Virus record (IMG/VR): IMGVR_UViG_3300020172_006270
Coordinates: 1 to 64,000 of that record
Strand: one strand, 5' to 3'
DNA: 64,000 bases
Both the position numbers and the translations under genes were made by a program. Positions 40,845 through 63,999 of the stretch are shown piece after piece (position 1 is the stretch's first letter; the number at the start of each line of letters is the position of its first letter). The notes beneath the pieces are model-generated. The model did not search any database. It saw nothing but the letters and a program-made list of their open reading frames with translations, and was not told the DNA's origin.

Positions 40845-42323
40845 ATGCCAATAGTAATAACGAAACCAGTGCTTACAGCAACCTATTTAGTGGTTGATGA
40901 GAATGGCACTGTTATTTCGTCTCACCCTCAAAATATCGAGATCGAGTCAGTAGACGCCGATAGTTTTTTGCAAGCTCTAAGTGATTTGATGCTGGCAAAA
41001 GACGGCCTTGAACTCACCGCTAGTGAAGTTCATATGTTGATACGCACTGGCAATATGATTTCTCTCGGTAACGTCCAAGCTGCCACTCTCGGCGTTCAGA
41101 GCCAATATCAATTCCCCACAGCGGTTGGATCGACCGGGCAGGTTATTGGGTATCAAGGCACGAGCCAGTTGGCATGGGTTAACTCAGGTAGTGGCGCTCA
41201 AGGCTTTCAAGGAAACCAAGGCGCACAGGGCAATCAAGGCGCACAAGGAAATCAAGGCAATCAAGGAAACCAGGGGTTTGCAGGCTCGGTTGGTTCACAA
41301 GGTTTTCAGGGCAATCAAGGCAATCAGGGAAATCAAGGCACACAAGGCAACCAAGGGAACCAGGGATTCCAAGGTTCTGCCGGTACTGTCGGAAATCAAG
41401 GATTTCAAGGTAATCAAGGTAATCAGGGAAACCAAGGAACACTAGGAAACCAAGGCAACCAGGGATTACAAGGTTCTGCTGGTACGGTTGGTTCACAAGG
41501 ATTCCAGGGAAACCAAGGCAATCAGGGTAATCAAGGCACTCAAGGCAACCAAGGAAACCAAGGCAACCAAGGAAACCAAGGAACCGCTGGATCACAGGGT
41601 TTTCAAGGCAACCAAGGCGCACAAGGTAATCAGGGAAATCAGGGCAACCAAGGCACACAAGGTTTCCAAGGCAATCAGGGTAATCAAGGAACTGCTGGCG
41701 CACAAGGATTCCAGGGCAACCAAGGCAATCAGGGAAATCAGGGCAACCAAGGCACGCAAGGTTTCCAAGGCAATCAGGGCAACCAAGGAACTGCTGGCGC
41801 ACAAGGATTCCAGGGAGTTCAAGGCGCACAAGGAAATCAAGGATCACAAGGAAACCAGGGCATTTCTGGCTTAGGGTTTAGTGTTCCTTATACATTCAAC
41901 ACAAGCACAGTGATGTCGGCGGCTTCTGGAGAAGTTCGATTCAATAATGCTACGATTGCATCTATTACCAATATCGACATCTCAAGAACAGATCGCAATG
42001 GTGCTGGTCAGCAAGCTGTGTTGGATCGCATGTCATCTGGCACATTGTTTAGATTCTCTGCCGAAGCTAGTGCTACACAATACAACTTCTTCCAAGCCAA
42101 TAGCGTAACGAAGAATGCTCAAGATTATAACTTTGCTGTTGCATACTTGTCGAACAATGGATCGTTGTTCTCTAACTCAGCAAATATTGGTTTGGGAATT
42201 GCCATGATCGGCTACCAGGGCAATCAGGGCGCTCAAGGCTTCCAGGGCTACCAAGGCTTCCAGGGCGCTCAAGGCGCACAAGGACACCAGGGCAACCAAG
42301 GTAATCAAGGAGGAGGCATATAA
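40845..42323 (+). CDS. Collagen-like (G-X-Q)n fibre protein
   Basis: Long GNQ/GFQ/GAQ triplet run flanked by non-repeat domains. Confidence 0.88.
   Translation: MPIVITKPVLTATYLVVDENGTVISSHPQNIEIESVDADSFLQALSDLMLAKDGLELTASEVHMLIRTGNMISLGNVQAATLGVQSQYQFPTAVGSTGQVIGYQGTSQLAWVNSGSGAQGFQGNQGAQGNQGAQGNQGNQGNQGFAGSVGSQGFQGNQGNQGNQGTQGNQGNQGFQGSAGTVGNQGFQGNQGNQGNQGTLGNQGNQGLQGSAGTVGSQGFQGNQGNQGNQGTQGNQGNQGNQGNQGTAGSQGFQGNQGAQGNQGNQGNQGTQGFQGNQGNQGTAGAQGFQGNQGNQGNQGNQGTQGFQGNQGNQGTAGAQGFQGVQGAQGNQGSQGNQGISGLGFSVPYTFNTSTVMSAASGEVRFNNATIASITNIDISRTDRNGAGQQAVLDRMSSGTLFRFSAEASATQYNFFQANSVTKNAQDYNFAVAYLSNNGSLFSNSANIGLGIAMIGYQGNQGAQGFQGYQGFQGAQGAQGHQGNQGNQGGGI
41193..41861 (+). repeat. 9-bp degenerate collagen repeat (GGN-NNN-CAR)
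   Basis: Directly visible ggcaaccaa/ggaaatcaa units. Confidence 0.9.
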
Positions 42324-42324
42324 A

Positions 42325-43929
42325 TTGATAATCACGATTAAACCACAAATATCGGTTAGACTTCTTAAAGCAGATGGTGATACCATCCTGTCTGCTCATG
42401 ATAAATCTATCGACGTTGATTTGGTTGCCGATGATTTCATCTCTGCATTCAATACTTTGTTTGCCGACAAAGACGATTATCAACTTGTTGAAAGACCTAT
42501 TGTTTCGACCAATTTCTTATTGGTAAACAATAATGATGTTGTTGTGGCAACTCATCCACAAAGAATTGAACTTGGATTGAACATCGAGAGCTTTTTGGAT
42601 GGCATGAATAAGCTGATCGAAATTCGAGATGGCTTAGGCGGCGTGAATGCGTTGCTCACAATGGGCAATATCATTTCACTCGGCAATGTGCAGGCTGTAT
42701 CTCTTGGCATTCAAAGCCAGTATACGTTTCCAACGACAGCCGGAGTGACTGGACAAGTCATTGGCTATCAAGGCACATCTCAATTGGAATGGATCAGTGG
42801 TGCTACTGGTTTGCAAGGCCCTCTTGGTCTTCAGGGTCGGCAAGGAAATCAGGGGAATCAAGGCAACCAAGGCACGCAGGGCTTCCAGGGCGTTGGATCG
42901 CAAGGCTCGCAAGGCTTTCAAGGCAACCAAGGTCGTCAAGGAAACCAGGGCAACCAAGGCAATCAAGGCAACCAAGGATTTCAAGGTGTTGGATCGCAAG
43001 GCTCTCAAGGCGCACAGGGAAACCAAGGTCGTCAAGGAAACCAGGGGAATCAAGGCAACCAAGGTACACAAGGTTTTCAAGGGTCTGGCTCGCAAGGTCT
43101 GCAAGGCGCTCAGGGAAACCAAGGCAACCAAGGTGTACAAGGCAACCAAGGAACGCAAGGCAACCAAGGCCGACAAGGAAATCAGGGAGCCGGTCTGCAA
43201 GGCGCACAGGGAAACCAAGGTCGTCAAGGCAACCAAGGAAATCAAGGCAATAGAGGCTTACAGGGTCCGCAGGGCCGACAAGGAAATCAGGGAGCCGGTC
43301 TGCAAGGTCGGCAAGGCAACCAAGGAACACAAGGAAGACAAGGCAACCAAGGCAATCAAGGCTTTCAAGGTCGCCAAGGCAACCAAGGTTTAGGACTTCA
43401 GGGGCGACAAGGCTTTCAAGGCAACCAGGGGAATCAAGGCTTTCAAGGCAATCAGGGAGTTATCGCTCCTGGGTTTGTGTTGCCGCTCGCATTCAACACA
43501 AGCACCGTAATGTCGGCGGCATCTGGAGAGTTGAGATTCAACAACGCTACTGTTGCATCTGTGACCAATATTGACGTGTCGAGAACCGATAGAAATGGTT
43601 CTGGTCAACAGGGCGTGCTTGATAAATTTGGTAATGGCACTTTGTTTTTCTTTACGTCTGAAGCGGTAGCTTCTCAGTATAGTTTTTTCACTACTACTGG
43701 CGTGACGAAGAATGCAAGTGACTATAACTTCAGCGTTAGCTATATTTCTAATGCTGGTACTTTGTTTGCTAACTCACAAAATGTGAGTATGGGTGTTGCT
43801 CTGCTTGGATTCCAAGGAATCAGCTTGCAGGGCGCTCAAGGCTTCCAAGGACGCCAAGGCTCTCAAGGCTTCCAAGGACACCAAGGCAACCAAGGCGATC
43901 CTGGTGGTCCGGTTATTGAAGACCCTTAA
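42325..43929 (+). CDS. Collagen-like (G-X-Q)n fibre protein, paralogue of 40845..42323
   Basis: Shares GNxISLGNVQA...GQVIGYQGTSQL and FNTSTVMSAASGE...SRTDRNG. Confidence 0.88.
   Translation: MIITIKPQISVRLLKADGDTILSAHDKSIDVDLVADDFISAFNTLFADKDDYQLVERPIVSTNFLLVNNNDVVVATHPQRIELGLNIESFLDGMNKLIEIRDGLGGVNALLTMGNIISLGNVQAVSLGIQSQYTFPTTAGVTGQVIGYQGTSQLEWISGATGLQGPLGLQGRQGNQGNQGNQGTQGFQGVGSQGSQGFQGNQGRQGNQGNQGNQGNQGFQGVGSQGSQGAQGNQGRQGNQGNQGNQGTQGFQGSGSQGLQGAQGNQGNQGVQGNQGTQGNQGRQGNQGAGLQGAQGNQGRQGNQGNQGNRGLQGPQGRQGNQGAGLQGRQGNQGTQGRQGNQGNQGFQGRQGNQGLGLQGRQGFQGNQGNQGFQGNQGVIAPGFVLPLAFNTSTVMSAASGELRFNNATVASVTNIDVSRTDRNGSGQQGVLDKFGNGTLFFFTSEAVASQYSFFTTTGVTKNASDYNFSVSYISNAGTLFANSQNVSMGVALLGFQGISLQGAQGFQGRQGSQGFQGHQGNQGDPGGPVIEDP
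42808..43458 (+). repeat. 9-bp degenerate collagen repeat
   Basis: GNQ/GRQ/GLQ triplets. Confidence 0.9.
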
Positions 43930-56449: not shown

Positions 56450-57037
56450 ATGCCTTTAGTACAGTGGATCATGCAGAATCTTTCGACTCCCAATGCCCAA
56501 GGCGGGGCAGTGGGTGGCGGTACTGCGCTCGTACAGCAAACCTCTTTTGTAATTGCCACAGGTGGCGCAAACGCAAGTGGCACATCCTTCTATGAAAAAA
56601 TATCCAGCATCATAGCCACAGGTGGTGCTGTTGCTGGTGGCGAAGCATATGTCAATGAGCAAGCAGCCAACATCAAAAAGGTTCGCCATCTACCCGGAGA
56701 CACGGTTTACGACAAGTGCAATAAGAGTTGGGTTGTCATTAGTTTTGAGTTTGCATCTTCTGGCGAACAGAAACTTCGTTTGTCCAACAATGTAAAACAA
56801 AAAGTTTTGTTTGAAAGTGAAATATCTAATCAACCAATTTATGTAATGGGCGAGGGGTTTAGAGATTGTTCTCTGGCTAATTTGCCAATATTTGTGGGCC
56901 GGAGGATAGTCAAATTTGGAAGTTTAGACCCCATTGAAGGACAGGCAGCAATAGCCAACTCCAAGATTATTGCACTAAAGGCACAGTCCTTGGCTAATTT
57001 GCCAGTTTACTCAGGAAGAAGGAAGGTTAAAGTATGA
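56450..57037 (+). CDS. Hypothetical (virion-like) protein
   Basis: GGAGG RBS; ATGGA repeats. Confidence 0.6.
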   Translation: MPLVQWIMQNLSTPNAQGGAVGGGTALVQQTSFVIATGGANASGTSFYEKISSIIATGGAVAGGEAYVNEQAANIKKVRHLPGDTVYDKCNKSWVVISFEFASSGEQKLRLSNNVKQKVLFESEISNQPIYVMGEGFRDCSLANLPIFVGRRIVKFGSLDPIEGQAAIANSKIIALKAQSLANLPVYSGRRKVKV

Positions 57038-57366
57038 CTTTATATTACACTGGCAGTGGAGGAGCAACGACGGGCGGCTGCGCTTTAACTTCTCGATATG
57101 TCTACATTGAATACAAATGGGGTGAAAACTCTGTATTGTATATCAAACACAAAGCAGTCAAAGGCATCTTGGAAAGAATAGCAATAAAACGAGTTATACT
57201 TAACAGTGGGCCAAAAACTGGCAATCAAATTGTTCCAATTTATCAAGACACACTCAATAGTCTATGGAACGAAGATGATCTGATTATTGAATCAGAGGCT
57301 AGAGATTTAGCCTTAGCTTATTGGGAAGCTCGTGAGGCTCAGATCGCTGCCGCTCAATGCAAATAA
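57034..57366 (+). CDS. Hypothetical protein
   Basis: ATGA-coupled; shares the GGAxxGG motif with the upstream gene. Confidence 0.6.
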   Translation: MTLYYTGSGGATTGGCALTSRYVYIEYKWGENSVLYIKHKAVKGILERIAIKRVILNSGPKTGNQIVPIYQDTLNSLWNEDDLIIESEARDLALAYWEAREAQIAAAQCK

Positions 57367-57396
57367 AAATAGCCAGGGTTTAATCCCTGGCTATTT
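57367..57396. terminator. Bidirectional terminator between convergent genes
   Basis: AAATAGCCAGGG/CCCTGGCTATTT perfect 12-bp stem. Confidence 0.85.
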
Positions 57397-57414
57397 CGTG
57401 TTTCGCCTTCAGAG

Positions 57415-58284
57415 TTATGCAACTTTGGACTTCAATTCCTTGAAGATTTCCGCAAGCGGCTTAATTTCCGCAGGGCCACTATCTTGGCGGGAACGCTCGT
57501 ATCCTGAGATAGAGTGTTTGATGGCGAGGGATCGGAACTGCTGCTCATTATTTAGGATGAGTAGATACCTCATAATGAGCGAGTCAGTAGGTGGGAAGCT
57601 GCCCTGAAGGACGACGCACAAGCGATCAACCAAGTTCCCTTGGTCGAACACATGGGTTATACCATGTCCCGTGAAGATTTGGTAGACGAGTCCGCTACGT
57701 CCCTTCACTGAGATAAACCCATGCTTGATGAAGTTGATATACTTCTGGTCCCCAATGACCCTTCGCAGCGTTTCCCTTGCCCGCTGCTCTCGAATATCCG
57801 CAGGGATCGGCAATGGTTGCCGCTTCGTATTTTGCCGAATAGCAATATTCGGCGCACATCGCCCCTGGATGATTTGAGAGAACCTATCTTTGAGTCGCTT
57901 CTCTTCGTAAGCCTTCTTCTCTTCAGCCGACATGGGCTTGGCTGCAACACCTTGCCATTCATATTCGACCGAACACTCGTCATCGCCCCACATGCCCCAT
58001 TGGATAGTGCAAGCCGTGGAAGCCGCAGAGCCAACACGCCAGACGTTCCCGGTGGAAGGCCAGCCGCAATTCGTGCTTTCGTCAATGATCTTGTATGACG
58101 TTGACGCATATGCTGCGCCTGCTCTATAAGCCTTCACTTTGATGCGAGGAATAGCTGTCGTAGCGGTGCCGTATTGGACCCATGTGCTACCCAAGGAGGT
58201 AGTAGCAGGTGATTCATACGTCACTTCGCAACTACCAACCGTGTATTTGTCGCTGCCGATTATCATATAGCCTCCTGGAGCCAT
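57415..58284 (-). CDS. Hypothetical protein; partner of the Gly-Gly-terminated protein
   Basis: C-terminal domain GFISVKGRSGLVYQI...LCV...PPTD. Confidence 0.7.
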   Translation of the reverse strand: MAPGGYMIIGSDKYTVGSCEVTYESPATTSLGSTWVQYGTATTAIPRIKVKAYRAGAAYASTSYKIIDESTNCGWPSTGNVWRVGSAASTACTIQWGMWGDDECSVEYEWQGVAAKPMSAEEKKAYEEKRLKDRFSQIIQGRCAPNIAIRQNTKRQPLPIPADIREQRARETLRRVIGDQKYINFIKHGFISVKGRSGLVYQIFTGHGITHVFDQGNLVDRLCVVLQGSFPPTDSLIMRYLLILNNEQQFRSLAIKHSISGYERSRQDSGPAEIKPLAEIFKELKSKVA

Positions 58285-58286
58285 GT

Positions 58287-58661
58287 TTAACCCCCTGCGA
58301 CCATTGCTACGGGGAGGAAGATGATTTCCTCAGCGTATGGATCGAACTCAGCCATGACTTCAGATGAAGCCCGGCCATTTACGCCCACACAATACGGAAC
58401 GAGTCCTTGAACGACCAGTTCATCGAACATTGCTTTTGCTTCGCTGATTTGAGCGAAGTCACGGCTATCCCACACCACTCGCTTGTCGCCATCCTTCGGC
58501 GTCATGATGCGGAAGCAACCGAATCCTTCGGGAGCCTTCTGAGCCGGATCGTCCATGATTCCCAGGTTGTCGGGAATTCTGAGCTTGGCCGATAAGTTGC
58601 CGGGGGTTTTTCCAACCCTCAACATTGCAACGTCAATCTCACGTTCTGCCGTAGCAGGCAT
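58287..58661 (-). CDS. Small protein with C-terminal Gly-Gly
   Basis: Ends FDPYAEEIIFLPVAMVAGG-stop; AAGGAG RBS. Confidence 0.75.
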   Translation of the reverse strand: MPATAEREIDVAMLRVGKTPGNLSAKLRIPDNLGIMDDPAQKAPEGFGCFRIMTPKDGDKRVVWDSRDFAQISEAKAMFDELVVQGLVPYCVGVNGRASSEVMAEFDPYAEEIIFLPVAMVAGG

Positions 58662-58672
58662 GATTGTCTCCT

Positions 58673-58954
58673 TTATTTGTAACGAATGACTCGAAATGAG
58701 TGCTTTGGAAAATCCTCTGCACCGCCTTCACCTTCGGTCAACATTAGACCGATATATTCTTTGTGATCTTCTGCCTTTGCGTCACCGAAGGTTCCATCGG
58801 CCACTAAAGTATTGGCGGCATCTTGGATGATCCTGACAGCATCAGGAACTTCCATTTCTTTTCCATCGAGTCCTCTCGCTACGAGAAGCACGATTTCTGG
58901 CAATGCAATGCTCGCACCAGCACGACCAGGATGGGGATCATAGAAAGTCTTCAT
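58673..58954 (-). CDS. Hypothetical protein
   Basis: Coupled ORF. Confidence 0.6.
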   Translation of the reverse strand: MKTFYDPHPGRAGASIALPEIVLLVARGLDGKEMEVPDAVRIIQDAANTLVADGTFGDAKAEDHKEYIGLMLTEGEGGAEDFPKHSFRVIRYK

Positions 58955-59328
58955 CCAATGTTACCTCCATACAACTCGAACCAGCGTTCCTTAATCATCG
59001 CATCGGCGATTGGACTGCGTGCATTGAGGTCTTCTTCTTTCTCAATCTTCACGCCATCTCGTCGCCCGCCCCAGCCCGTAGCTGATTTCATCTTGGCCGT
59101 CAGTGGTTCTTTGCTGTAGGCCGACAAAGGTGGGCAGATTTCTTCTTTGGCACCGTTCTCGCTACGGCCATTTTCGTAAATCACACCATCCTTGATGAAG
59201 CGATGGTGTTTATGTTTACATTTAGGGCAGACGATTTCCACGCCGATGGTGAGAGCCATATTCAGTCTTACTCGAAAATAGCCCGAACACTCACCGCAGT
59301 AAAACTCCTGCCATACTTTGTTATCCAT
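58951..59328 (-). CDS. Zinc-ribbon protein
   Basis: CGEC...CPKC. Confidence 0.65.
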   Translation of the reverse strand: MDNKVWQEFYCGECSGYFRVRLNMALTIGVEIVCPKCKHKHHRFIKDGVIYENGRSENGAKEEICPPLSAYSKEPLTAKMKSATGWGGRRDGVKIEKEEDLNARSPIADAMIKERWFELYGGNIG

Positions 59329-60719
59329 TAGTCCCTCGGCCTCAATAGGGGGAATGCAATTACGTCTCGAATGGTAGCCTGATTGGTCAGGATAGCCACA
59401 AGACGGTCGATGCCAAGTCCAAGACCGCCAGCCGGAGGCATACCTGTCTTGATGGCATCTACGAAGTCTTGATCCATAACGTGACCGTCCTTGGCTTGCT
59501 TTTGGAAATTCTCCAATTGAATATCCGGGTCGTTCAACTCGGTATATCCTGGCGCAATTTCCATGCCGCCAATGACCAGTTCAAATGTCTCTGCGTATCC
59601 TTGGTTTCCATCATACTTGCCGAATGGTCGTGCCAATGGCACTGCACTAGCAGGCATGTGCATAACGAAGGTTGGCTGAATCAGCGTTGATTCAATCGTG
59701 TCTTCGTATACCTGGAAGCGATATTCGGGCGAGCCGTCTCCGACCACCAGTTCTTGCAAGGATACTCGCTTGAATGGTGGAGTGAAGTTTAGCAGATGTT
59801 CCTTGTAGGGAATATCCATAAGGCGACCGTGAATCTTTTCCACTTGGTTGACGATAAGAGCCTCAACCAGCTTCATCATCGTCTCGTAGTTGCCAAAGGC
59901 TTGGTAAGCCTCCATAGACGTGAATTCAGGGTTGTGGCGAGGGCTGATGCCTTCATTGCGGAAGTTCTTGCCGATCTCGAAGACCTTGTTCATGCCGCCA
60001 ATGAGCAACTTCTTCAGATATAGCTCAGGGGCAATACGAAGGAACATGCCAATGTCGAGGGCATTGTGGTGCGTCATGAATGGCTTGGCGATAGCACCAC
60101 CAGCCGACGCTTGCAGAATCGGAGTTTCGACTTCATCAAAGCCACGATCATACATCATCGTGCGAATATCACGAATGATATTGGCTCGCTGCCGAAACAC
60201 CTTCATGGTGTCCGGGTTGGTCCACATATCAACGTGGCGAAGACGATACTTGAGTTCCGGGTCATTTAGCCCGTGAACCTTGTCTGGTGGTGGCGTGAGA
60301 GCCTTAGATACAATACGAAACGTATCGGCCCAAATAGTGATCTCGCCACGCTGAGTAGCGGCCAGACGACCCCGGACAGCGACAATATCGCCCAGGTCCA
60401 ATGCTTCGTATTGTGGCCAATCCCATCGTTGAGCTACAGGACCAGCAAACTTAGACTGGTCGATGGCAACTTGGATTTGCCCATCCTCACTTGTGATGGT
60501 GAGGAAGGACAACTTTCCATGACCCCGCTTGAGCGCACACCGACCAACAATAACAAACTCCGGGCCGTCTTCCTTGGTGAAAGAGGCATCAAAGCTGTCA
60601 CGAACAATATCAATGTTCGTTGGTGCTGGATCAATAATGGACATATCGAAAGGCCGGTGTCCCTTGGCCTTTAGATCGTCTAACTTGGCTCGGCGTTCAT
60701 CAACAGGGTTGTTGCTCAT
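59328..60719 (-). CDS. lysS: Lysyl-tRNA synthetase (class II)
   Basis: OB fold, EVETPIL, LRIAPELYLK, FRNEG, HNPEFT, GMPPAGGLGLGIDRL. Confidence 0.97.
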   Translation of the reverse strand: MSNNPVDERRAKLDDLKAKGHRPFDMSIIDPAPTNIDIVRDSFDASFTKEDGPEFVIVGRCALKRGHGKLSFLTITSEDGQIQVAIDQSKFAGPVAQRWDWPQYEALDLGDIVAVRGRLAATQRGEITIWADTFRIVSKALTPPPDKVHGLNDPELKYRLRHVDMWTNPDTMKVFRQRANIIRDIRTMMYDRGFDEVETPILQASAGGAIAKPFMTHHNALDIGMFLRIAPELYLKKLLIGGMNKVFEIGKNFRNEGISPRHNPEFTSMEAYQAFGNYETMMKLVEALIVNQVEKIHGRLMDIPYKEHLLNFTPPFKRVSLQELVVGDGSPEYRFQVYEDTIESTLIQPTFVMHMPASAVPLARPFGKYDGNQGYAETFELVIGGMEIAPGYTELNDPDIQLENFQKQAKDGHVMDQDFVDAIKTGMPPAGGLGLGIDRLVAILTNQATIRDVIAFPLLRPRD

Positions 60720-60721
60720 GA

Positions 60722-61213
60722 TTATCTCTTGCCAGTGACGGCATTCATATCGTTGAAACGAGGCCCGATTTCAATCGGAGCCAGTTCAATGGCGACCTCG
60801 AATAGACCGCCATGAACGTAAGGGCGTAAATACGCCACGCACTTGTTTTCTGCATCGACAAAGGTGAACGGATTCAGGGAACGCAGGTGTCGCATGATGA
60901 CGAACCATTCGGCGACAGGCACAGCAGCCTTGAGTGGCTGTGGTGCATCCACATGCAAATGGACTTGTCCATTATTCATGTGTTGTCGAATGGCCTGGGT
61001 CTGCATAGGAACACCAGTTCCCTGCAAATTAAGCGGTGGTGGCGGCACTACGTTCGTCGGTGGTTGAACATAGTCCGGCGCAAGGATGGTTCCTGGCGAG
61101 CCGCCCATGCTAGGACTTGCAGCCCCGGCATCTTTTTTCTTTTTGCCCTTATCGGACTCAAGAACGGATTCGTTGATCCCGCCCATTTTCTTTCTCCTGT
61201 TAAAAGGCCACAT
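60722..61213 (-). CDS. Hypothetical protein
   Basis: Operonic ORF. Confidence 0.65.
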   Translation of the reverse strand: MWPFNRRKKMGGINESVLESDKGKKKKDAGAASPSMGGSPGTILAPDYVQPPTNVVPPPPLNLQGTGVPMQTQAIRQHMNNGQVHLHVDAPQPLKAAVPVAEWFVIMRHLRSLNPFTFVDAENKCVAYLRPYVHGGLFEVAIELAPIEIGPRFNDMNAVTGKR

Positions 61214-62871: not shown

Positions 62872-63999
62872 TTACTCGTTTGTCATCATGCCCATCTTGG
62901 GGAGGAATACTTCCAAAGGCAAGGTTTCCTGATCGCCCGAAGTTGATCTCATTTGCTTGAGAGTCACAGTCCTTGCGGTCTTTTCTTTTTCTCCCAAGAT
63001 GACCATATACGGTACTTTTTTCTCATACCCGATGGCAATCTTTTGTTGTAGCGTCCGATTCGAGTGATCGCATTCACACCGAATCCCTTGAGCGAGCAAG
63101 GCTTCTTTGACTTCGTTGGCGTAATCAGCAACCTTGTCGCTGATTGGTGCAATAGTAACACCGACCGGAGCCAACCACATTGGTAAATTCCCATCAGTGT
63201 GTTCTAACAGCACACCGATGAAACGCTCGAAGCTGCCATATATCGCTCGGTGAATAACAATCGGAGTTTGTTCTTTGTCTTCCTTGTCGGTGTAAGTGCA
63301 ACCGAATCGCTGCGGCAATTGGAAGTCTAACTGGATAGTAGCAGTTTGCCATTCACGACCCAGGGAGTCAGTTACAATGAAGTCGATTTTCGGTCCATAA
63401 AAAGCACCGTCTTTATGAGCCACGTCAAACTTCAAATTATTTTCACACAAGGCGTCTTCAAGGCTTGCTTCAGCATTATCCCAAGTCAATATATCGCCCA
63501 TGAAGTTATCGGGACGAGTGCTGAGTACGGATCGGAACTTCATTCCGAACCAGCCGTATACTCTGCCGATCATAATGAGAATTCGCTTGATCTCGCTTTG
63601 CAGGTTGTCCGGCGAAACGAAAATATGGGCATCATCTTGGCAGAACGCACGACAACGAGTAAGTCCACCCAAGGCACCGGAAACCTCGTTTCGATGCAAT
63701 GGGCCATACTCGGCGAACCGCACGGGCAAATCTCGATAGCTCCACTGCTTTGAGCGGAATATCTCCATATGCCCAGGGCAGTTCATTGGCTTCAAACAAC
63801 AATCTTCATGTTCTTCGTCTTGCTTCTCGCCAGTTGGCTTATCGCTGACGAAGAACATATTTTTCGCATAGTGGTCCAGATGCCCGCTGGTTGCATAAAG
63901 TTCGGACTTCCAGACGAGTGGGGTCCGAACTTCTTGGCAACCATTGGCTTCATTGAGTTGGCGAATGCGATTCAGCAATGATTGATAAAGGACAACTCC
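62872..63999 (-). CDS. thrS: Threonyl-tRNA synthetase, 5'-partial (runs off the window)
   Basis: SGHLDHY, KPMNCPGH, HRNE, QDDAHIF, GAFYGPKID, HRAIYGSFERF; frame is open to the window end. Confidence 0.97.
   Translation of the reverse strand, partial: GVVLYQSLLNRIRQLNEANGCQEVRTPLVWKSELYATSGHLDHYAKNMFFVSDKPTGEKQDEEHEDCCLKPMNCPGHMEIFRSKQWSYRDLPVRFAEYGPLHRNEVSGALGGLTRCRAFCQDDAHIFVSPDNLQSEIKRILIMIGRVYGWFGMKFRSVLSTRPDNFMGDILTWDNAEASLEDALCENNLKFDVAHKDGAFYGPKIDFIVTDSLGREWQTATIQLDFQLPQRFGCTYTDKEDKEQTPIVIHRAIYGSFERFIGVLLEHTDGNLPMWLAPVGVTIAPISDKVADYANEVKEALLAQGIRCECDHSNRTLQQKIAIGYEKKVPYMVILGEKEKTARTVTLKQMRSTSGDQETLPLEVFLPKMGMMTNE

What the first reader, a model, noticed from the sequence alone, without database searches (positions are those of the whole stretch)
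57415..58661. Small protein ending in Gly-Gly coupled to a Cys-containing partner: possible ubiquitin-like conjugation pair
Seen: a 124-aa protein ends ...IIFLPVAMVAGG-stop; after a 2-nt gap comes a 289-aa protein whose C-terminal domain holds LCV...PPTD; a Zn-ribbon gene lies two ORFs upstream. Known: C-terminal GG marks ubiquitin/ThiS/MoaD-type modifiers, and bacterial Bil systems conjugate Ubls to phage proteins. No E1 or JAB gene is visible in this window. Inference: a phage-encoded modifier with a non-canonical ligase or hydrolase, or a decoy for host Ubl defences.
Basis: partly seen in the sequence, partly recalled or inferred. Interest (0 to 1): 0.68.

Follow-up and report, generated by a model that had tools for sequence, protein, structure and literature searches.

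The report
Huge-phage ubiquitin-like and E2-like gene pair
Two neighbouring genes of a 223-kb phage encode a small ubiquitin-shaped protein that always ends in glycine and a partner with one invariant cysteine; the pair is conserved across huge phages, is predicted to dock tail-to-cysteine, and looks like a previously undescribed phage version of a ubiquitin-type tagging system.

Summary
On the minus strand, ORF A (58287-58661, 124 aa) ends in VAGG-stop. After a 2-nt gap comes ORF B (57415-58284, 289 aa) with LCVVLQGSFPPTD.

Neither protein matches any Pfam, PHROG, NCBIfam or PADLOC family. Both belong to large families confined to metagenomic huge phages.

- The A terminus is GG in 114 of 120 database homologues and AG in 6. 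It is never extended.
- Cys223 of B is present in all 120 listed homologues and in all 25 loci.
- A is followed by B in 25 of 25 loci. The pair is usually the end of a four-gene cassette: an MGG-start protein, a Zn-ribbon, A, then B.
- In AlphaFold models, A residues 45-124 resemble a beta-grasp with a free tail, and B residues 160-260 resemble a UBC/RWD fold. Both matches are weak (Z at most 5.3).
- A complex prediction passes its controls (ipSAE 0.75 against 0.01 or less) and lays the A tail along the Cys223 loop.

The window has no E1 or JAB gene. Three related phages carry ThiF-family E1 genes, one of them tail-to-tail with B.

Best reading, at about 0.45: a phage Ubl:E2-like pair that does covalent chemistry at the terminal glycine. 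Conjugation itself is untested.

The parts
58287..58661 (-). ORF A, 124 aa. It has an N-terminal beta extension (aa 1-44), a beta-grasp-like core (aa 45-117) and a flexible tail VAMVAGG that ends exactly at Gly124. An AAGGAG Shine-Dalgarno sequence lies 5 nt upstream.
   Evidence: ORF and sequence. GG/AG terminus in 120 of 120 homologues. AlphaFold model, pLDDT 79, strand-strand-helix-strand-strand order. All top structural neighbours over residues 45-124 are beta-grasp proteins (Ubl, PB1, RBD, MoaD, TtuB, Ufm1) at Z 2.7-4.1.
57415..58284 (-). ORF B, 289 aa, translationally coupled to A through a 2-nt gap.
   Evidence: It has 422 homologues, none with a Pfam domain.
57931..58284 (-). N-terminal domain of B (aa 1 to about 118). 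It is hypervariable in length and sequence between homologues, rich in W/C/T/S/G, and modelled with low confidence.
   Evidence: Alignment A2, where there is almost no column conservation before aa 133. pLDDT is below 50 for aa 18-113.
57418..57807 (-). Conserved C-terminal domain of B (aa 160-289), with alpha-beta4-alpha-alpha topology. The invariant Cys223 (codon 57616-57618) sits at the end of strand 4, 9 residues before helix 232-245. The FPPTD motif and invariant D234, R239 and N245 follow.
   Evidence: Invariant columns. pLDDT about 90. VIA-align hits covering the whole domain: (Ubc9 Z 5.3, rmsd 3.1, 82 aa; RWD domains Z 4.1-4.5; E2S Z 3.7; UEV Z 3.6). Predicted interface with the A tail.
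57366..57397 (-). Hairpin of 13 pairs followed by a T-run, 18 nt after the stop of B. It ends the minus-strand operon, and the convergent plus-strand gene ends at 57366.
58951..59328 (-). F3, a 125-aa Zn-ribbon protein with CxxC...CPxCxHxHxR, all invariant. It is a conserved member of the cassette, immediately upstream of A in most loci.
   Evidence: Present in 23 of 25 loci. Alignment A7. Weak Zn_ribbon_8 / FmdB hits below cutoff.
58673..58954 (-). A 93-aa ORF between F3 and A. It is found only in the closest relatives, so it is a lineage-specific insert.
   Evidence: Family F22 occurs in only 5 loci. No family hit.
59328..60719 (-). Lysine-tRNA ligase, 463 aa, inserted between F2 and F3. It is cargo, not a conserved cassette member; other phages carry unrelated genes or nothing at this point.
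   Evidence: Pfam tRNA-synt_2 at 1.7e-83. NCBIfam PRK00484 at 503.8 bits, above its cutoff. Synteny maps.
60722..61186 (-). F2, the first conserved gene of the cassette. Its likely true start is the second ATG (61186), preceded by AGGAGA, giving a 154-aa protein that begins with an invariant MGG. A Lys-rich, low-complexity tail and then a domain of about 85 aa with invariant R.H...H.H.D follow.
   Evidence: Present in 23 of 25 loci. Alignment A5. Shine-Dalgarno sequence. No Pfam or PDB relative.

Best explanation
A and B are a cognate ubiquitin-like protein and E2-like cysteine partner encoded by huge phages.

A is made in its mature form. Its beta-grasp core carries a flexible 7-residue tail that ends in a genetically fixed C-terminal glycine, so no processing protease is needed.

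A docks its beta-sheet face on the N-terminal helix and the 'crossover' helix (aa 232-245) of B's UBC/RWD-like domain. Its tail lies as an extra strand along B residues 224-227, which brings Gly123-Gly124 next to the invariant Cys223.

The inferred chemistry is as follows.

- The glycine carboxylate is activated by a ThiF/MoeB-type adenylating enzyme. That enzyme is phage-encoded in some relatives and presumably borrowed from the host, or encoded elsewhere in the genome, in the others.
- The activated A is passed to Cys223 as a thioester.
- From there it is transferred to an amine on a target.
- B's hypervariable N-terminal domain would choose the target.

The two other conserved cassette genes are candidate accessory factors or substrates. 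They are the Zn-ribbon F3 and the MGG-start, Lys-rich F2.

What is shown, in silico only: conservation, linkage, the two folds (weakly) and the docking geometry. What is inferred: adenylation, the thioester, transfer, and the identity of targets.
For: 1. The terminal Gly is invariant and never extended. GG occurs in 114 and AG in 6 of 120 homologues; KG and PG appear once each among distant loci.
2. Cys223 is the only invariant Cys of B. It is kept in all 120 listed homologues and even at 27% identity in Rctr197k.
3. A is followed by B on the same strand in 25 of 25 loci from phages whose contigs run from about 10 to 670 kb. The genes are directly abutting in 21.
4. In the A model, aa 45-117 have the ubiquitin order of strands and helix, followed by a low-pLDDT tail. 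Every top neighbour over this range is a beta-grasp protein, including MoaD and TtuB aligned end to end.
5. The only hits that cover B's whole C-terminal domain are Ubc9 (Z 5.3, rmsd 3.1, 82 aa), four RWD domains (Z 4.1-4.5), E2S and UEV domains.
6. Complex prediction gives ipSAE 0.75 (three runs: 0.74-0.76; at least 81% of contacts shared; partner pLDDT 80) against a best control of 0.01. That mark was reached by 58 of 80 solved complexes and 2 of 110 mismatched pairs in the tool's calibration. A residues 120-124 touch B residues 223-231, and A's sheet touches B helices 164-181 and 234-246.
7. Positions that are at least 90% conserved are enriched at that interface: A has odds ratio 3.3, p=0.01; B has odds ratio 5.4, p=2e-5.
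8. ThiF-family E1 genes lie tail-to-tail with B in L016 (Pfam 1.3e-65), 5.5 kb downstream in L023, and next to a Prok-JAB gene elsewhere in LR756511. No other GG-ending small ORF lies near the L016 or L023 E1 genes.
Against: - Fold similarity is weak: Z is at most 4.1 for A and 5.3 for B. The tool warns that Z under 8 can reflect a common arrangement only, and Foldseek gave no significant PDB hit for either model.
- There is no sequence-level link to any Ubl or E2 family. Pfam, NCBIfam, PADLOC and PHROGs are blank, and hhalign against E. coli MoaD and ThiS is not significant.
- B lacks the HPN motif. The link between strand 4 and helix 2 is 8 residues, against about 30 in Ubc9.
- Cys223 sits in a hydrophobic stretch (LCVVL) and could be structural.
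- No E1 is found in the window's 64 kb or within 10 kb of the pair in 19 of 21 non-redundant viral loci, nor in two further neighbourhoods with precomputed Pfam calls.
- The complex predictor used my own unpaired alignments, so its calibration holds only roughly.
Confidence: 0.45

Rival explanations
1. A and B form a tight non-covalent heterodimer with no conjugation chemistry. A is a beta-grasp adaptor and B is a UEV/RWD-like non-catalytic domain with a variable N-terminal recognition domain, for example a regulatory or virion-associated complex. The terminal glycines and Cys223 are then conserved for packing of the tail strand against B.
For: - The predicted interface is large (86 contacts) and conserved, which is more typical of an obligate complex than of a transient E2~Ub pair.
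- RWD and UEV domains, which are non-catalytic, score about as well as E2s.
- Cys223 lies in a hydrophobic strand, LCVVL.
- No E1 is linked in most loci.
- B's W/C/T/S-rich hypervariable N-terminus resembles a surface or receptor-binding module.
Against: - A purely structural Cys and a purely structural last residue would be expected to drift at 27-40% identity, and neither does.
- The reading frame stops exactly after the Gly in all 120 homologues and all 22 loci read, which suggests that a free carboxylate matters.
- The cassette sits among tRNA-synthetase and other auxiliary genes, not among recognisable structural genes.
Confidence: 0.25
2. This is a sulfur-relay pair. A is a ThiS/MoaD/TtuB-type sulfur carrier whose C-terminal Gly is adenylated and converted to a thiocarboxylate. 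B carries the sulfur as a persulfide on Cys223, or uses the thiocarboxylate, for a phage-specific thio-modification of tRNA, DNA or a cofactor.
For: - The tail ...EEIIFLPxxxVxGG resembles the MoaD ending ...DEVAFFPPVTGG, and the best (non-significant) hhalign segment is exactly that stretch.
- MoaD and TtuB appear among the structural neighbours, aligned end to end.
- The E1 genes found nearby are of the short MoeB/ThiF type, 250 aa, 33-37% identical to the E. coli enzymes.
- The pair sits among translation-related genes: LysRS and a second class II aaRS.
Against: - B resembles none of the known sulfur-carrier partners (MoaE, ThiG, TtuA, rhodanese, TusA). tblastn with MoaE finds nothing and Pfam is blank.
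- No PP-loop ATPase, cysteine desulfurase or rhodanese is conserved in the cassette.
- A hypervariable N-terminal domain on B is hard to reconcile with a small-molecule or tRNA pathway.
Confidence: 0.12
3. The pair is a counter-defence device. A/B mimics or intercepts host ubiquitin-like defence systems (Bil, Bub, CBASS Cap2/Cap3). B could be a Cys-dependent deconjugase or an E2 decoy, or A could be a decoy Ubl that titrates the host E1/E2.
For: - Host Ubl systems that target phage parts are known (PMC10557695; 10.1101/2023.09.04.556158).
- The pair is restricted to phages: only 1 hit in 185,579 species genomes, on a MAG contig.
- The hypervariable domain on B is consistent with an arms race.
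- H257 is nearly invariant and N245 and D234 are invariant. With Cys223 they could form a protease-type site.
Against: - There is no similarity to any PADLOC Bil or CBASS component.
- B's fold hits are not papain-, JAB- or Ulp-like.
- A is already mature, so B is not needed as a processing enzyme.
- The cassette is conserved as a core-like module in very diverse huge phages, whereas anti-defence genes are usually patchy.
Confidence: 0.1

Closest known systems
Bacterial Bil (BilABCD) ubiquitination-like anti-phage system (Chambers et al., PMC10557695; Hör et al., 10.1101/2023.09.04.556158)
   Same: Both have a small beta-grasp Ubl whose C-terminal glycine is the reactive end, encoded next to an E2-type protein with a catalytic cysteine, in a compact prokaryotic-style operon in the phage-host arena.
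   Different: - Bil needs and encodes an E1 and a JAB deubiquitinase that trims the Ubl to expose its Gly. Here the Ubl is born mature, and the cassette has no E1 or JAB.
- Here the accompanying genes are a Zn-ribbon and an MGG-start protein.
- The owner is the phage, not the host.
- There is no detectable sequence similarity (PADLOC and Pfam blank).
Canonical E2 / UBC superfamily, including non-catalytic RWD and UEV domains (e.g. Ubc9, 4y1l)
   Same: - The alpha-beta4-alpha-alpha topology is shared.
- The invariant Cys lies between strand 4 and the crossover helix.
- The predicted docking of the Ubl sheet on that helix, with the tail running to the Cys, resembles the closed E2~Ub arrangement (the last comparison rests on my knowledge of E2~Ub structures).
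   Different: - There is no HPN motif.
- The loop from strand 4 to helix 2 is about 8 residues instead of about 30.
- Extra helices lie on both sides, and an N-terminal hypervariable domain is fused.
- Z is only 5.3, and there is no UQ_con or Prok-E2 Pfam hit.
ThiS/MoaD/TtuB sulfur-carrier proteins with ThiF/MoeB adenylating enzymes
   Same: - A beta-grasp of about 70-80 aa ends in a ...P..xGG tail.
- MoeB/ThiF-like E1 genes lie beside the pair in some phages.
   Different: - A has a 44-aa N-terminal extension.
- There is no significant profile match to E. coli MoaD or ThiS.
- The partner is not MoaE-, ThiG- or TtuA-like.
- E1 linkage is seen in only 2 of 21 non-redundant viral loci.
Bub (bacterial ubiquitination-like) and CBASS type II Cap2/Cap3 pathways (PMC11601596; PMC10097602)
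   Same: These are diverged prokaryotic E1/E2/Ubl-type machineries showing that such systems can depart far from the eukaryotic sequence families and mechanisms.
   Different: - Bub works through oxyester (Ser) intermediates, with a peptidase-E1 fusion.
- CBASS conjugates the C-terminus of a CD-NTase using an E1-E2 fusion.
- Neither architecture, nor any CD-NTase, is present here.
Caldiarchaeum-type minimal operon: Ub, E1-like, E2-like, small RING/Zn finger, Rpn11 (PMC5654768)
   Same: Both are compact operons that combine a Ubl, an E2-like protein and a small zinc-finger protein.
   Different: - That operon has recognisable E1 and JAB genes and eukaryote-like sequences.
- The phage Zn-ribbon (CxxC...CPxCxHxH) was not shown to be RING-like.

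Membership tests
Ubiquitin-like beta-grasp modifiers / sulfur carriers (Ub, ThiS, MoaD superfamily) | Beta-grasp fold (strand-strand-helix-strand-strand around one helix) | tested here: inconclusive
   The AF2 model (pLDDT 79) has the right order of elements for aa 45-117. All top neighbours in three searches are beta-grasp proteins, but Z is at most 4.1 and Foldseek E is at least 0.055.
Ubiquitin-like beta-grasp modifiers / sulfur carriers (Ub, ThiS, MoaD superfamily) | Flexible C-terminal tail ending in Gly (usually Gly-Gly) as the reactive carboxylate | tested here: met
   GG in 114 and AG in 6 of 120 homologues. The terminal G is invariant in all loci. The tail has pLDDT below 50 in the monomer model.
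Ubiquitin-like beta-grasp modifiers / sulfur carriers (Ub, ThiS, MoaD superfamily) | Sequence-profile membership (Pfam ThiS, ubiquitin, Prok_Ub, etc.) | tested here: not met
   No Pfam hit for the window protein or for any of 63 family members at E up to 5. hhalign against E. coli MoaD and ThiS gives probability below 1%.
Ubiquitin-like beta-grasp modifiers / sulfur carriers (Ub, ThiS, MoaD superfamily) | C-terminal adenylation by a ThiF/MoeB/E1-type enzyme | not testable with these tools
   Only gene context is available. A ThiF-family gene is adjacent in L016, 5.5 kb away in L023 and 60 kb away in LR756511. None is in the window.
E2 / UBC-fold conjugating enzymes | UBC-type alpha/beta fold (N-terminal helix, four-stranded antiparallel sheet, crossover helix) | tested here: inconclusive
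   pLDDT is about 90 for aa 160-260, with that order of elements. Hits are Ubc9 Z 5.3 over 163-252, RWD Z 4.1-4.5, E2S Z 3.7 and UEV Z 3.6. Foldseek found nothing.
E2 / UBC-fold conjugating enzymes | Invariant catalytic Cys between strand 4 and the crossover helix | tested here: met
   C223 is invariant and lies at the end of strand 217-223, 9 residues before helix 232-245. Catalysis itself was not tested.
E2 / UBC-fold conjugating enzymes | HPN motif upstream of the Cys, and UQ_con / Prok-E2 profile match | tested here: not met
   There is no HPN in the alignment. No Pfam E2 family is hit by any of 59 members at E up to 5.
E2 / UBC-fold conjugating enzymes | Binds its Ubl with the Ubl C-terminus at the active-site Cys (thioester) | tested here: inconclusive
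   In silico only. ipSAE is 0.75 against controls of 0.01 or less, and the tail (120-124) contacts 223-231. Covalent bond formation is not testable here.
Bil (BilABCD) defence system | Four genes together: Ubl, E2, E1 and a JAB deubiquitinase that processes the Ubl | tested here: not met
   The conserved cassette is F2 - Zn-ribbon - A - B with no E1 or JAB. A needs no processing. PADLOC is blank.
MoaD-MoaE / ThiS-ThiG type sulfur-carrier pairs | Partner is the cognate synthase (MoaE, ThiG) or a PP-loop thiolase | tested here: not met
   B has no Pfam or NCBIfam hit. tblastn with E. coli MoaE finds nothing in the window or the loci.

The most novel reading that the evidence does not exclude
The four-gene cassette may be a self-contained phage protein-ligation machine that works without a classical E1.

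- The Zn-ribbon (CxxC...CPxCxHxH) and the His-rich F2 domain (R.H...H.H.D) would supply a new way of activating or transferring the Ubl.
- Alternatively, F2, with its invariant N-terminal Gly-Gly (after Met removal) and Lys-rich tail, is the dedicated acceptor to which A's terminal Gly is joined.
- B's hypervariable N-terminal domain would then redirect the tag to fast-evolving host targets.

This would be the first ubiquitin-type conjugation system owned by bacteriophages.
Probability: 0.15. Interest if true: 0.9.

Novelty: new variant of a known kind. Interest (0 to 1): 0.72.

Why it matters
Ubiquitin-type conjugation has so far been found on the bacterial side of the phage-host conflict (Bil, Bub, CBASS Cap2). 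A Ubl:E2-like module carried by the phages themselves would reverse that picture.

It would suggest that huge phages tag host proteins, or their own, much as eukaryotic viruses exploit ubiquitin.

The B family is large, with at least 1,622 clusters at 50% identity. It is conserved from phage contigs of about 75 to 670 kb and is invisible to every current annotation library. Naming it would therefore annotate thousands of 'hypothetical' genes.

It also offers a minimal, E1-less architecture for asking how Ubl activation and E2 chemistry evolved. If the pair turns out to be non-covalent or a sulfur relay, it is still a new, widespread huge-phage complex with a clear structural hypothesis to test.

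Tried and rejected
**Searches that came back blank**
- Pfam, PHROGs, NCBIfam and PADLOC scans of A, B, F2, F3 and the 93-aa ORF gave nothing, apart from sub-threshold Zn-ribbon hits for F3.
- In the per-member scans, DUF5370 was hit by 15 of 59 B domains (best E 0.0036) and DUF4788 by 4 of 63 A proteins. I treated both as noise.
- PDB profile search: the A profile hit designed PPR repeats through one helix (EEAxxMFDELxxxGLVP), a repeat-summing artefact. The B profile hit Abraxas-2 at E 0.017, not supported by the fold searches. F2 and the 1004-aa protein gave nothing.
- Foldseek against the PDB gave no significant hit for either model. The pdb_via second look at B returned only beta-propeller blades and similar partial matches.
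- hhalign of the A profile against E. coli MoaD and ThiS was not significant.

**Ideas tested and dropped**
- A diversity-generating retroelement as the source of B's variable N-terminus: no template-like repeats in 54-64 kb.
- LysRS as a dedicated activating enzyme: it is a bona fide LysRS and is not conserved in the cassette.
- The 443-aa inserts in L020 and L022 are unrelated to LysRS.

**Searches for relatives and context**
- Cellular homologues: one MAG contig in 185,579 species genomes.
- A cultured model phage: a weak BFVD hit to Agrobacterium phage Atu_ph07 (E 0.064) was not confirmed by three tblastn searches. Only LR756511 and Rctr197k among 50,697 GenBank phage records carry the pair.
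- The representative search returned only close family members in its 150 listed rows, so it could not bridge to known families.
- Literature searches found no description of a phage-encoded Ubl/E2 pair.
- Two extra neighbourhoods with precomputed Pfam calls showed no ThiF or JAB.
Full report
**1. The observation**

The window is positions 1-64000 of IMG/VR contig IMGVR_UViG_3300020172_006270, which is 223,268 bp long. It has the gene content of a jumbo phage: a Gp23-type capsid protein, DNA polymerase A, RNA ligase, two class II aminoacyl-tRNA synthetases, collagen-repeat proteins and many glycosyltransferases.

On the minus strand, ORF A (58287..58661, 124 aa) ends ...IIFLPVAMVAGG-TAA. Two nucleotides later ORF B starts (57415..58284, 289 aa) and contains LCVVLQGSFPPTD with Cys223. 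A has a canonical AAGGAG ribosome-binding site. B is followed after 18 nt by a 13-pair hairpin with a T-run (57366-57397). So A and B are the last two, translationally coupled, genes of an operon. The Zn-ribbon ORF sits two ORFs upstream, as described.

**2. Conservation**

Neither protein hits Pfam, PHROGs, NCBIfam or PADLOC. Both nevertheless have many relatives:

- A has 161 homologues and B has 422 in the 5.8-billion-protein set. All are metagenomic, and many lie on contigs of 100-670 kb.
- A profile of B's C-terminal domain finds 1,622 clusters (50% identity) at E of 1e-3 or better.
- Among GenBank phages, only the 595-kb uncultured phage LR756511 and virus Rctr197k carry them.
- Among one genome for each of 185,579 prokaryotic species, only one MAG contig does.

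All 120 listed A homologues stop exactly after a glycine: GG in 114 and AG in 6. In the more distant loci the ending is GG, AG, KG or PG, so the last Gly is invariant and the penultimate one nearly so.

B has a hypervariable N-terminal part. It varies in length, is rich in W/C/T/S/G and has almost no conserved columns. It is followed by a very conserved C-terminal domain of about 160 aa, whose invariant residues include the single Cys223, T233, D234, R239 and N245. The six homologues that break the PPTD motif still keep LCVVL.

**3. Linkage and the wider cassette**

I collected 22 viral loci, LR756511, Rctr197k and the window itself. In all 25, A is followed by B on the same strand. The genes abut in 21 and are separated by one to five inserted ORFs in four. 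Two further loci found through B also have A just upstream.

Clustering all ORFs showed two more families present in 23 of 25 loci, always upstream and in the same order: F2 - F3 - A - B.

- **F3** is the Zn-ribbon (window 58951..59328), with invariant CxxC...CPxCxHxHxR.
- **F2** (window 60722..61213) almost certainly starts at its second ATG (61186), which alone has an AGGAG site. In 20 diverged homologues the protein then begins with an invariant MGG. A Lys-rich low-complexity tail and a small domain with invariant R.H...H.H.D follow.

F2 and F3 have no detectable relatives of known function. The LysRS between F2 and F3 in the window is a bona fide lysine-tRNA ligase. It is not conserved at that position; other phages carry unrelated inserts or none.

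**4. Folds**

*Protein A.* The AlphaFold model, built on 63 sequences, has pLDDT 79. It shows an N-terminal three-strand extension (aa 1-44). Then come strand 47-54, strand 58-65, helix 69-84, strand 87-92, a short bridge and strand 112-117. A low-confidence tail at 118-124 ends the chain. That is the ubiquitin order of elements.

Foldseek gives no significant hit, but its weak list is dominated by Ubl, Ras-binding, PB1 and UBX domains. VIA-align against 48,161 chains and against Foldseek's top 1,000 gives only beta-grasp proteins over residues 45-124. Among them are MoaD (1fm0_D, Z 2.9, model 47-124 on chain 1-81), TtuB and Ufm1, with a best Z of 4.1.

*Protein B.* The model is confident only for aa 120-142 and 160-260. 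The latter region is helix-helix-four strands-helix-helix, with Cys223 at the end of strand 4. VIA-align's only matches that span the whole domain are:

| Match | Z | Detail |
|---|---|---|
| Ubc9 (4y1l_C) | 5.3 | rmsd 3.1, 82 aa |
| Four RWD domains | 4.1-4.5 | |
| Knl1 RWD | 3.9 | |
| E2S | 3.7 | |
| Tsg101 / VPS37 UEV domains | 3.6-3.7 | |

These Z values lie in the range the tool flags as possibly uninformative. I therefore treat both fold assignments as probable, not established. The canonical HPN motif is absent, and the loop carrying the Cys is much shorter than in E2s.

**5. Do they bind, and how?**

I ran the one complex job on B(125-289) plus A. It gave ipSAE 0.75 (runs 0.74, 0.76, 0.75) against 0.00-0.01 for three controls. 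At least 81% of contacts were shared between runs, and partner pLDDT was 80. In the tool's calibration, 58 of 80 solved complexes and 2 of 110 mismatched pairs reach this mark. Those counts hold only roughly here, because my own alignments were used.

- The confident contacts put A residues 120-122 alongside B residues 224-227, as an added strand.
- The whole tail (120-124) lies against 223-231, the Cys223 loop.
- A's beta1-beta2 hairpin (the invariant DGDKR..W loop), beta3 and beta5 pack on B's helices 164-181 and 234-246.
- Positions at least 90% conserved are enriched at this interface: A has odds ratio 3.3, p=0.01; B has odds ratio 5.4, p=2e-5.

From my knowledge of E2~ubiquitin structures, this resembles the 'closed' arrangement, in which the Ubl sheet packs on the crossover helix and the tail leads to the Cys. 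That comparison is an inference, because I could not inspect coordinates.

**6. Where is the E1?**

The window has none, by Pfam on 71 ORFs or by tblastn with E. coli ThiF and MoeB. The same tblastn did find ThiF-family genes in related phages:

- In L016, a 250-aa ThiF protein (Pfam 1.3e-65) lies tail-to-tail with B, overlapping its end.
- In L023, an orthologue (4.1e-65) lies 5.5 kb downstream.
- In LR756511, a 217-aa ThiF protein (6.8e-32) lies about 60 kb from the cassette. It sits in a cluster with a Prok-JAB protein that carries an intact HxHx7SxxD motif.

In L016 and L023 the E1 is paired with an unknown protein of about 1,000 aa. No other small GG-ending ORF is nearby, which leaves A as the only visible candidate substrate.

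E1 linkage is thus real but sporadic: 2 of 21 non-redundant viral loci within 10 kb, and none in two further annotated neighbourhoods. Whether the window's phage encodes an E1 in its other 159 kb could not be checked.

**7. Interpretation**

The most economical reading is a cognate Ubl:E2-like pair. A mature, Gly-terminated beta-grasp protein is held by a UBC/RWD-like domain so that its carboxylate sits at an invariant Cys. A variable N-terminal domain on the E2-like protein is suited to choosing targets. Activation would come from a ThiF-type enzyme supplied in cis in some phages and from elsewhere in the others. I put this at about 0.45.

The main rivals are:

- an obligate non-covalent complex (0.25), favoured by the large interface, the RWD/UEV resemblance and the usual lack of an E1;
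- a sulfur-carrier relay (0.12), favoured by the MoaD-like tail and the MoeB-type E1s;
- a counter-defence decoy or deconjugase (0.10).

That the ORFs are not real genes can be excluded.

**8. Comparison with known systems and novelty**

The pair works like, but is not a member of, Bil, Bub, CBASS Cap2/Cap3 or the ThiS/MoaD systems.

- It fails their sequence models.
- It lacks their E1 and peptidase genes.
- It needs no Ubl processing.
- It has different accessory genes, and it is phage-owned.

Full-text searches found no description of a phage-encoded Ubl/E2 pair. I therefore class it as a new variant of a known kind of system. It has a real chance (about 0.15) of being mechanistically new: E1-independent, or with F2 as a built-in acceptor.

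The practical limits are the weak fold scores, the absence of a cultured phage carrying the pair, and the fact that all mechanistic steps beyond binding are inferred.

Noticed in passing
window 60722-61213 (-): F2, the first cassette gene, has its Shine-Dalgarno sequence before the second ATG (61186). The protein therefore starts with MGG, which is invariant in 20 homologues at 23-33% identity. A Lys-rich tail and an invariant R.H...H.H.D motif follow. An N-terminal Gly-Gly encoded next to a C-terminal Gly-Gly protein is striking and unexplained.
   Followed up: partly
L033 35616-37541 (LR756511 about 280.6-282.5 kb): A second ubiquitin-type cluster sits in the 595-kb relative: a ThiF-family E1 (217 aa), a 214-aa protein of unknown function and a Prok-JAB peptidase (158 aa, HTHPx7SxxD). 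It lies 60 kb from that phage's A/B cassette.
   Followed up: partly
L016 11078-14813 and L023 13574-17327: A conserved two-gene unit of an unknown protein of about 1,000 aa (63% identical between the two phages; no Pfam or PDB relative) plus a ThiF-family E1. It lies beside the cassette in two phages only.
   Followed up: partly
window 59328-60719 (-) and 62872-63978 (-): There are two phage-encoded class II aminoacyl-tRNA synthetases. One is a full-length lysine-tRNA ligase (NCBIfam score above cutoff) inserted inside the cassette. The other is a 368-aa tRNA-synt_2b + HGTP_anticodon enzyme. ARAGORN found no tRNA genes in the 64 kb.
   Followed up: partly
window 40845-43929 (+): Two adjacent large proteins (492 and 534 aa) carry collagen triple-helix repeats (Pfam E 7e-42 and 3e-31), probably fibre or whisker components.
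   Followed up: no
window 56450-57037 (+): A 195-aa protein on the opposite strand, converging on the cassette's terminator. It has internal ATGG(A/G)xxxG repeats (direct repeat 56552/56612) and a faint PHROG 'head protein' hit (E 0.06).
   Followed up: no
L002 3351-3605 (Rctr197k): The distant relative Rctr197k has an annotated CRISPR array and a transposase-like gene about 1.3-3 kb upstream of its A/B pair, and it lacks recognisable F2 and F3.
   Followed up: no
BFVD entry A0A2L0UZL2 (Agrobacterium phage Atu_ph07): The B model has a weak Foldseek match (E 0.064, probability 0.93) to a 397-aa protein of a cultured 490-kb jumbo phage. tblastn with three different family members did not confirm it. 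If real, it would provide a laboratory model.
   Followed up: partly
window 1-34000: The first half of the window is rich in sugar- and cofactor-related genes: several glycosyltransferases, a radical SAM protein, cobalamin adenosyltransferase, amine oxidase, thioredoxin-like proteins, dCMP deaminase and NUDIX. GC content drops to 38-40% in the first 6 kb.
   Followed up: no
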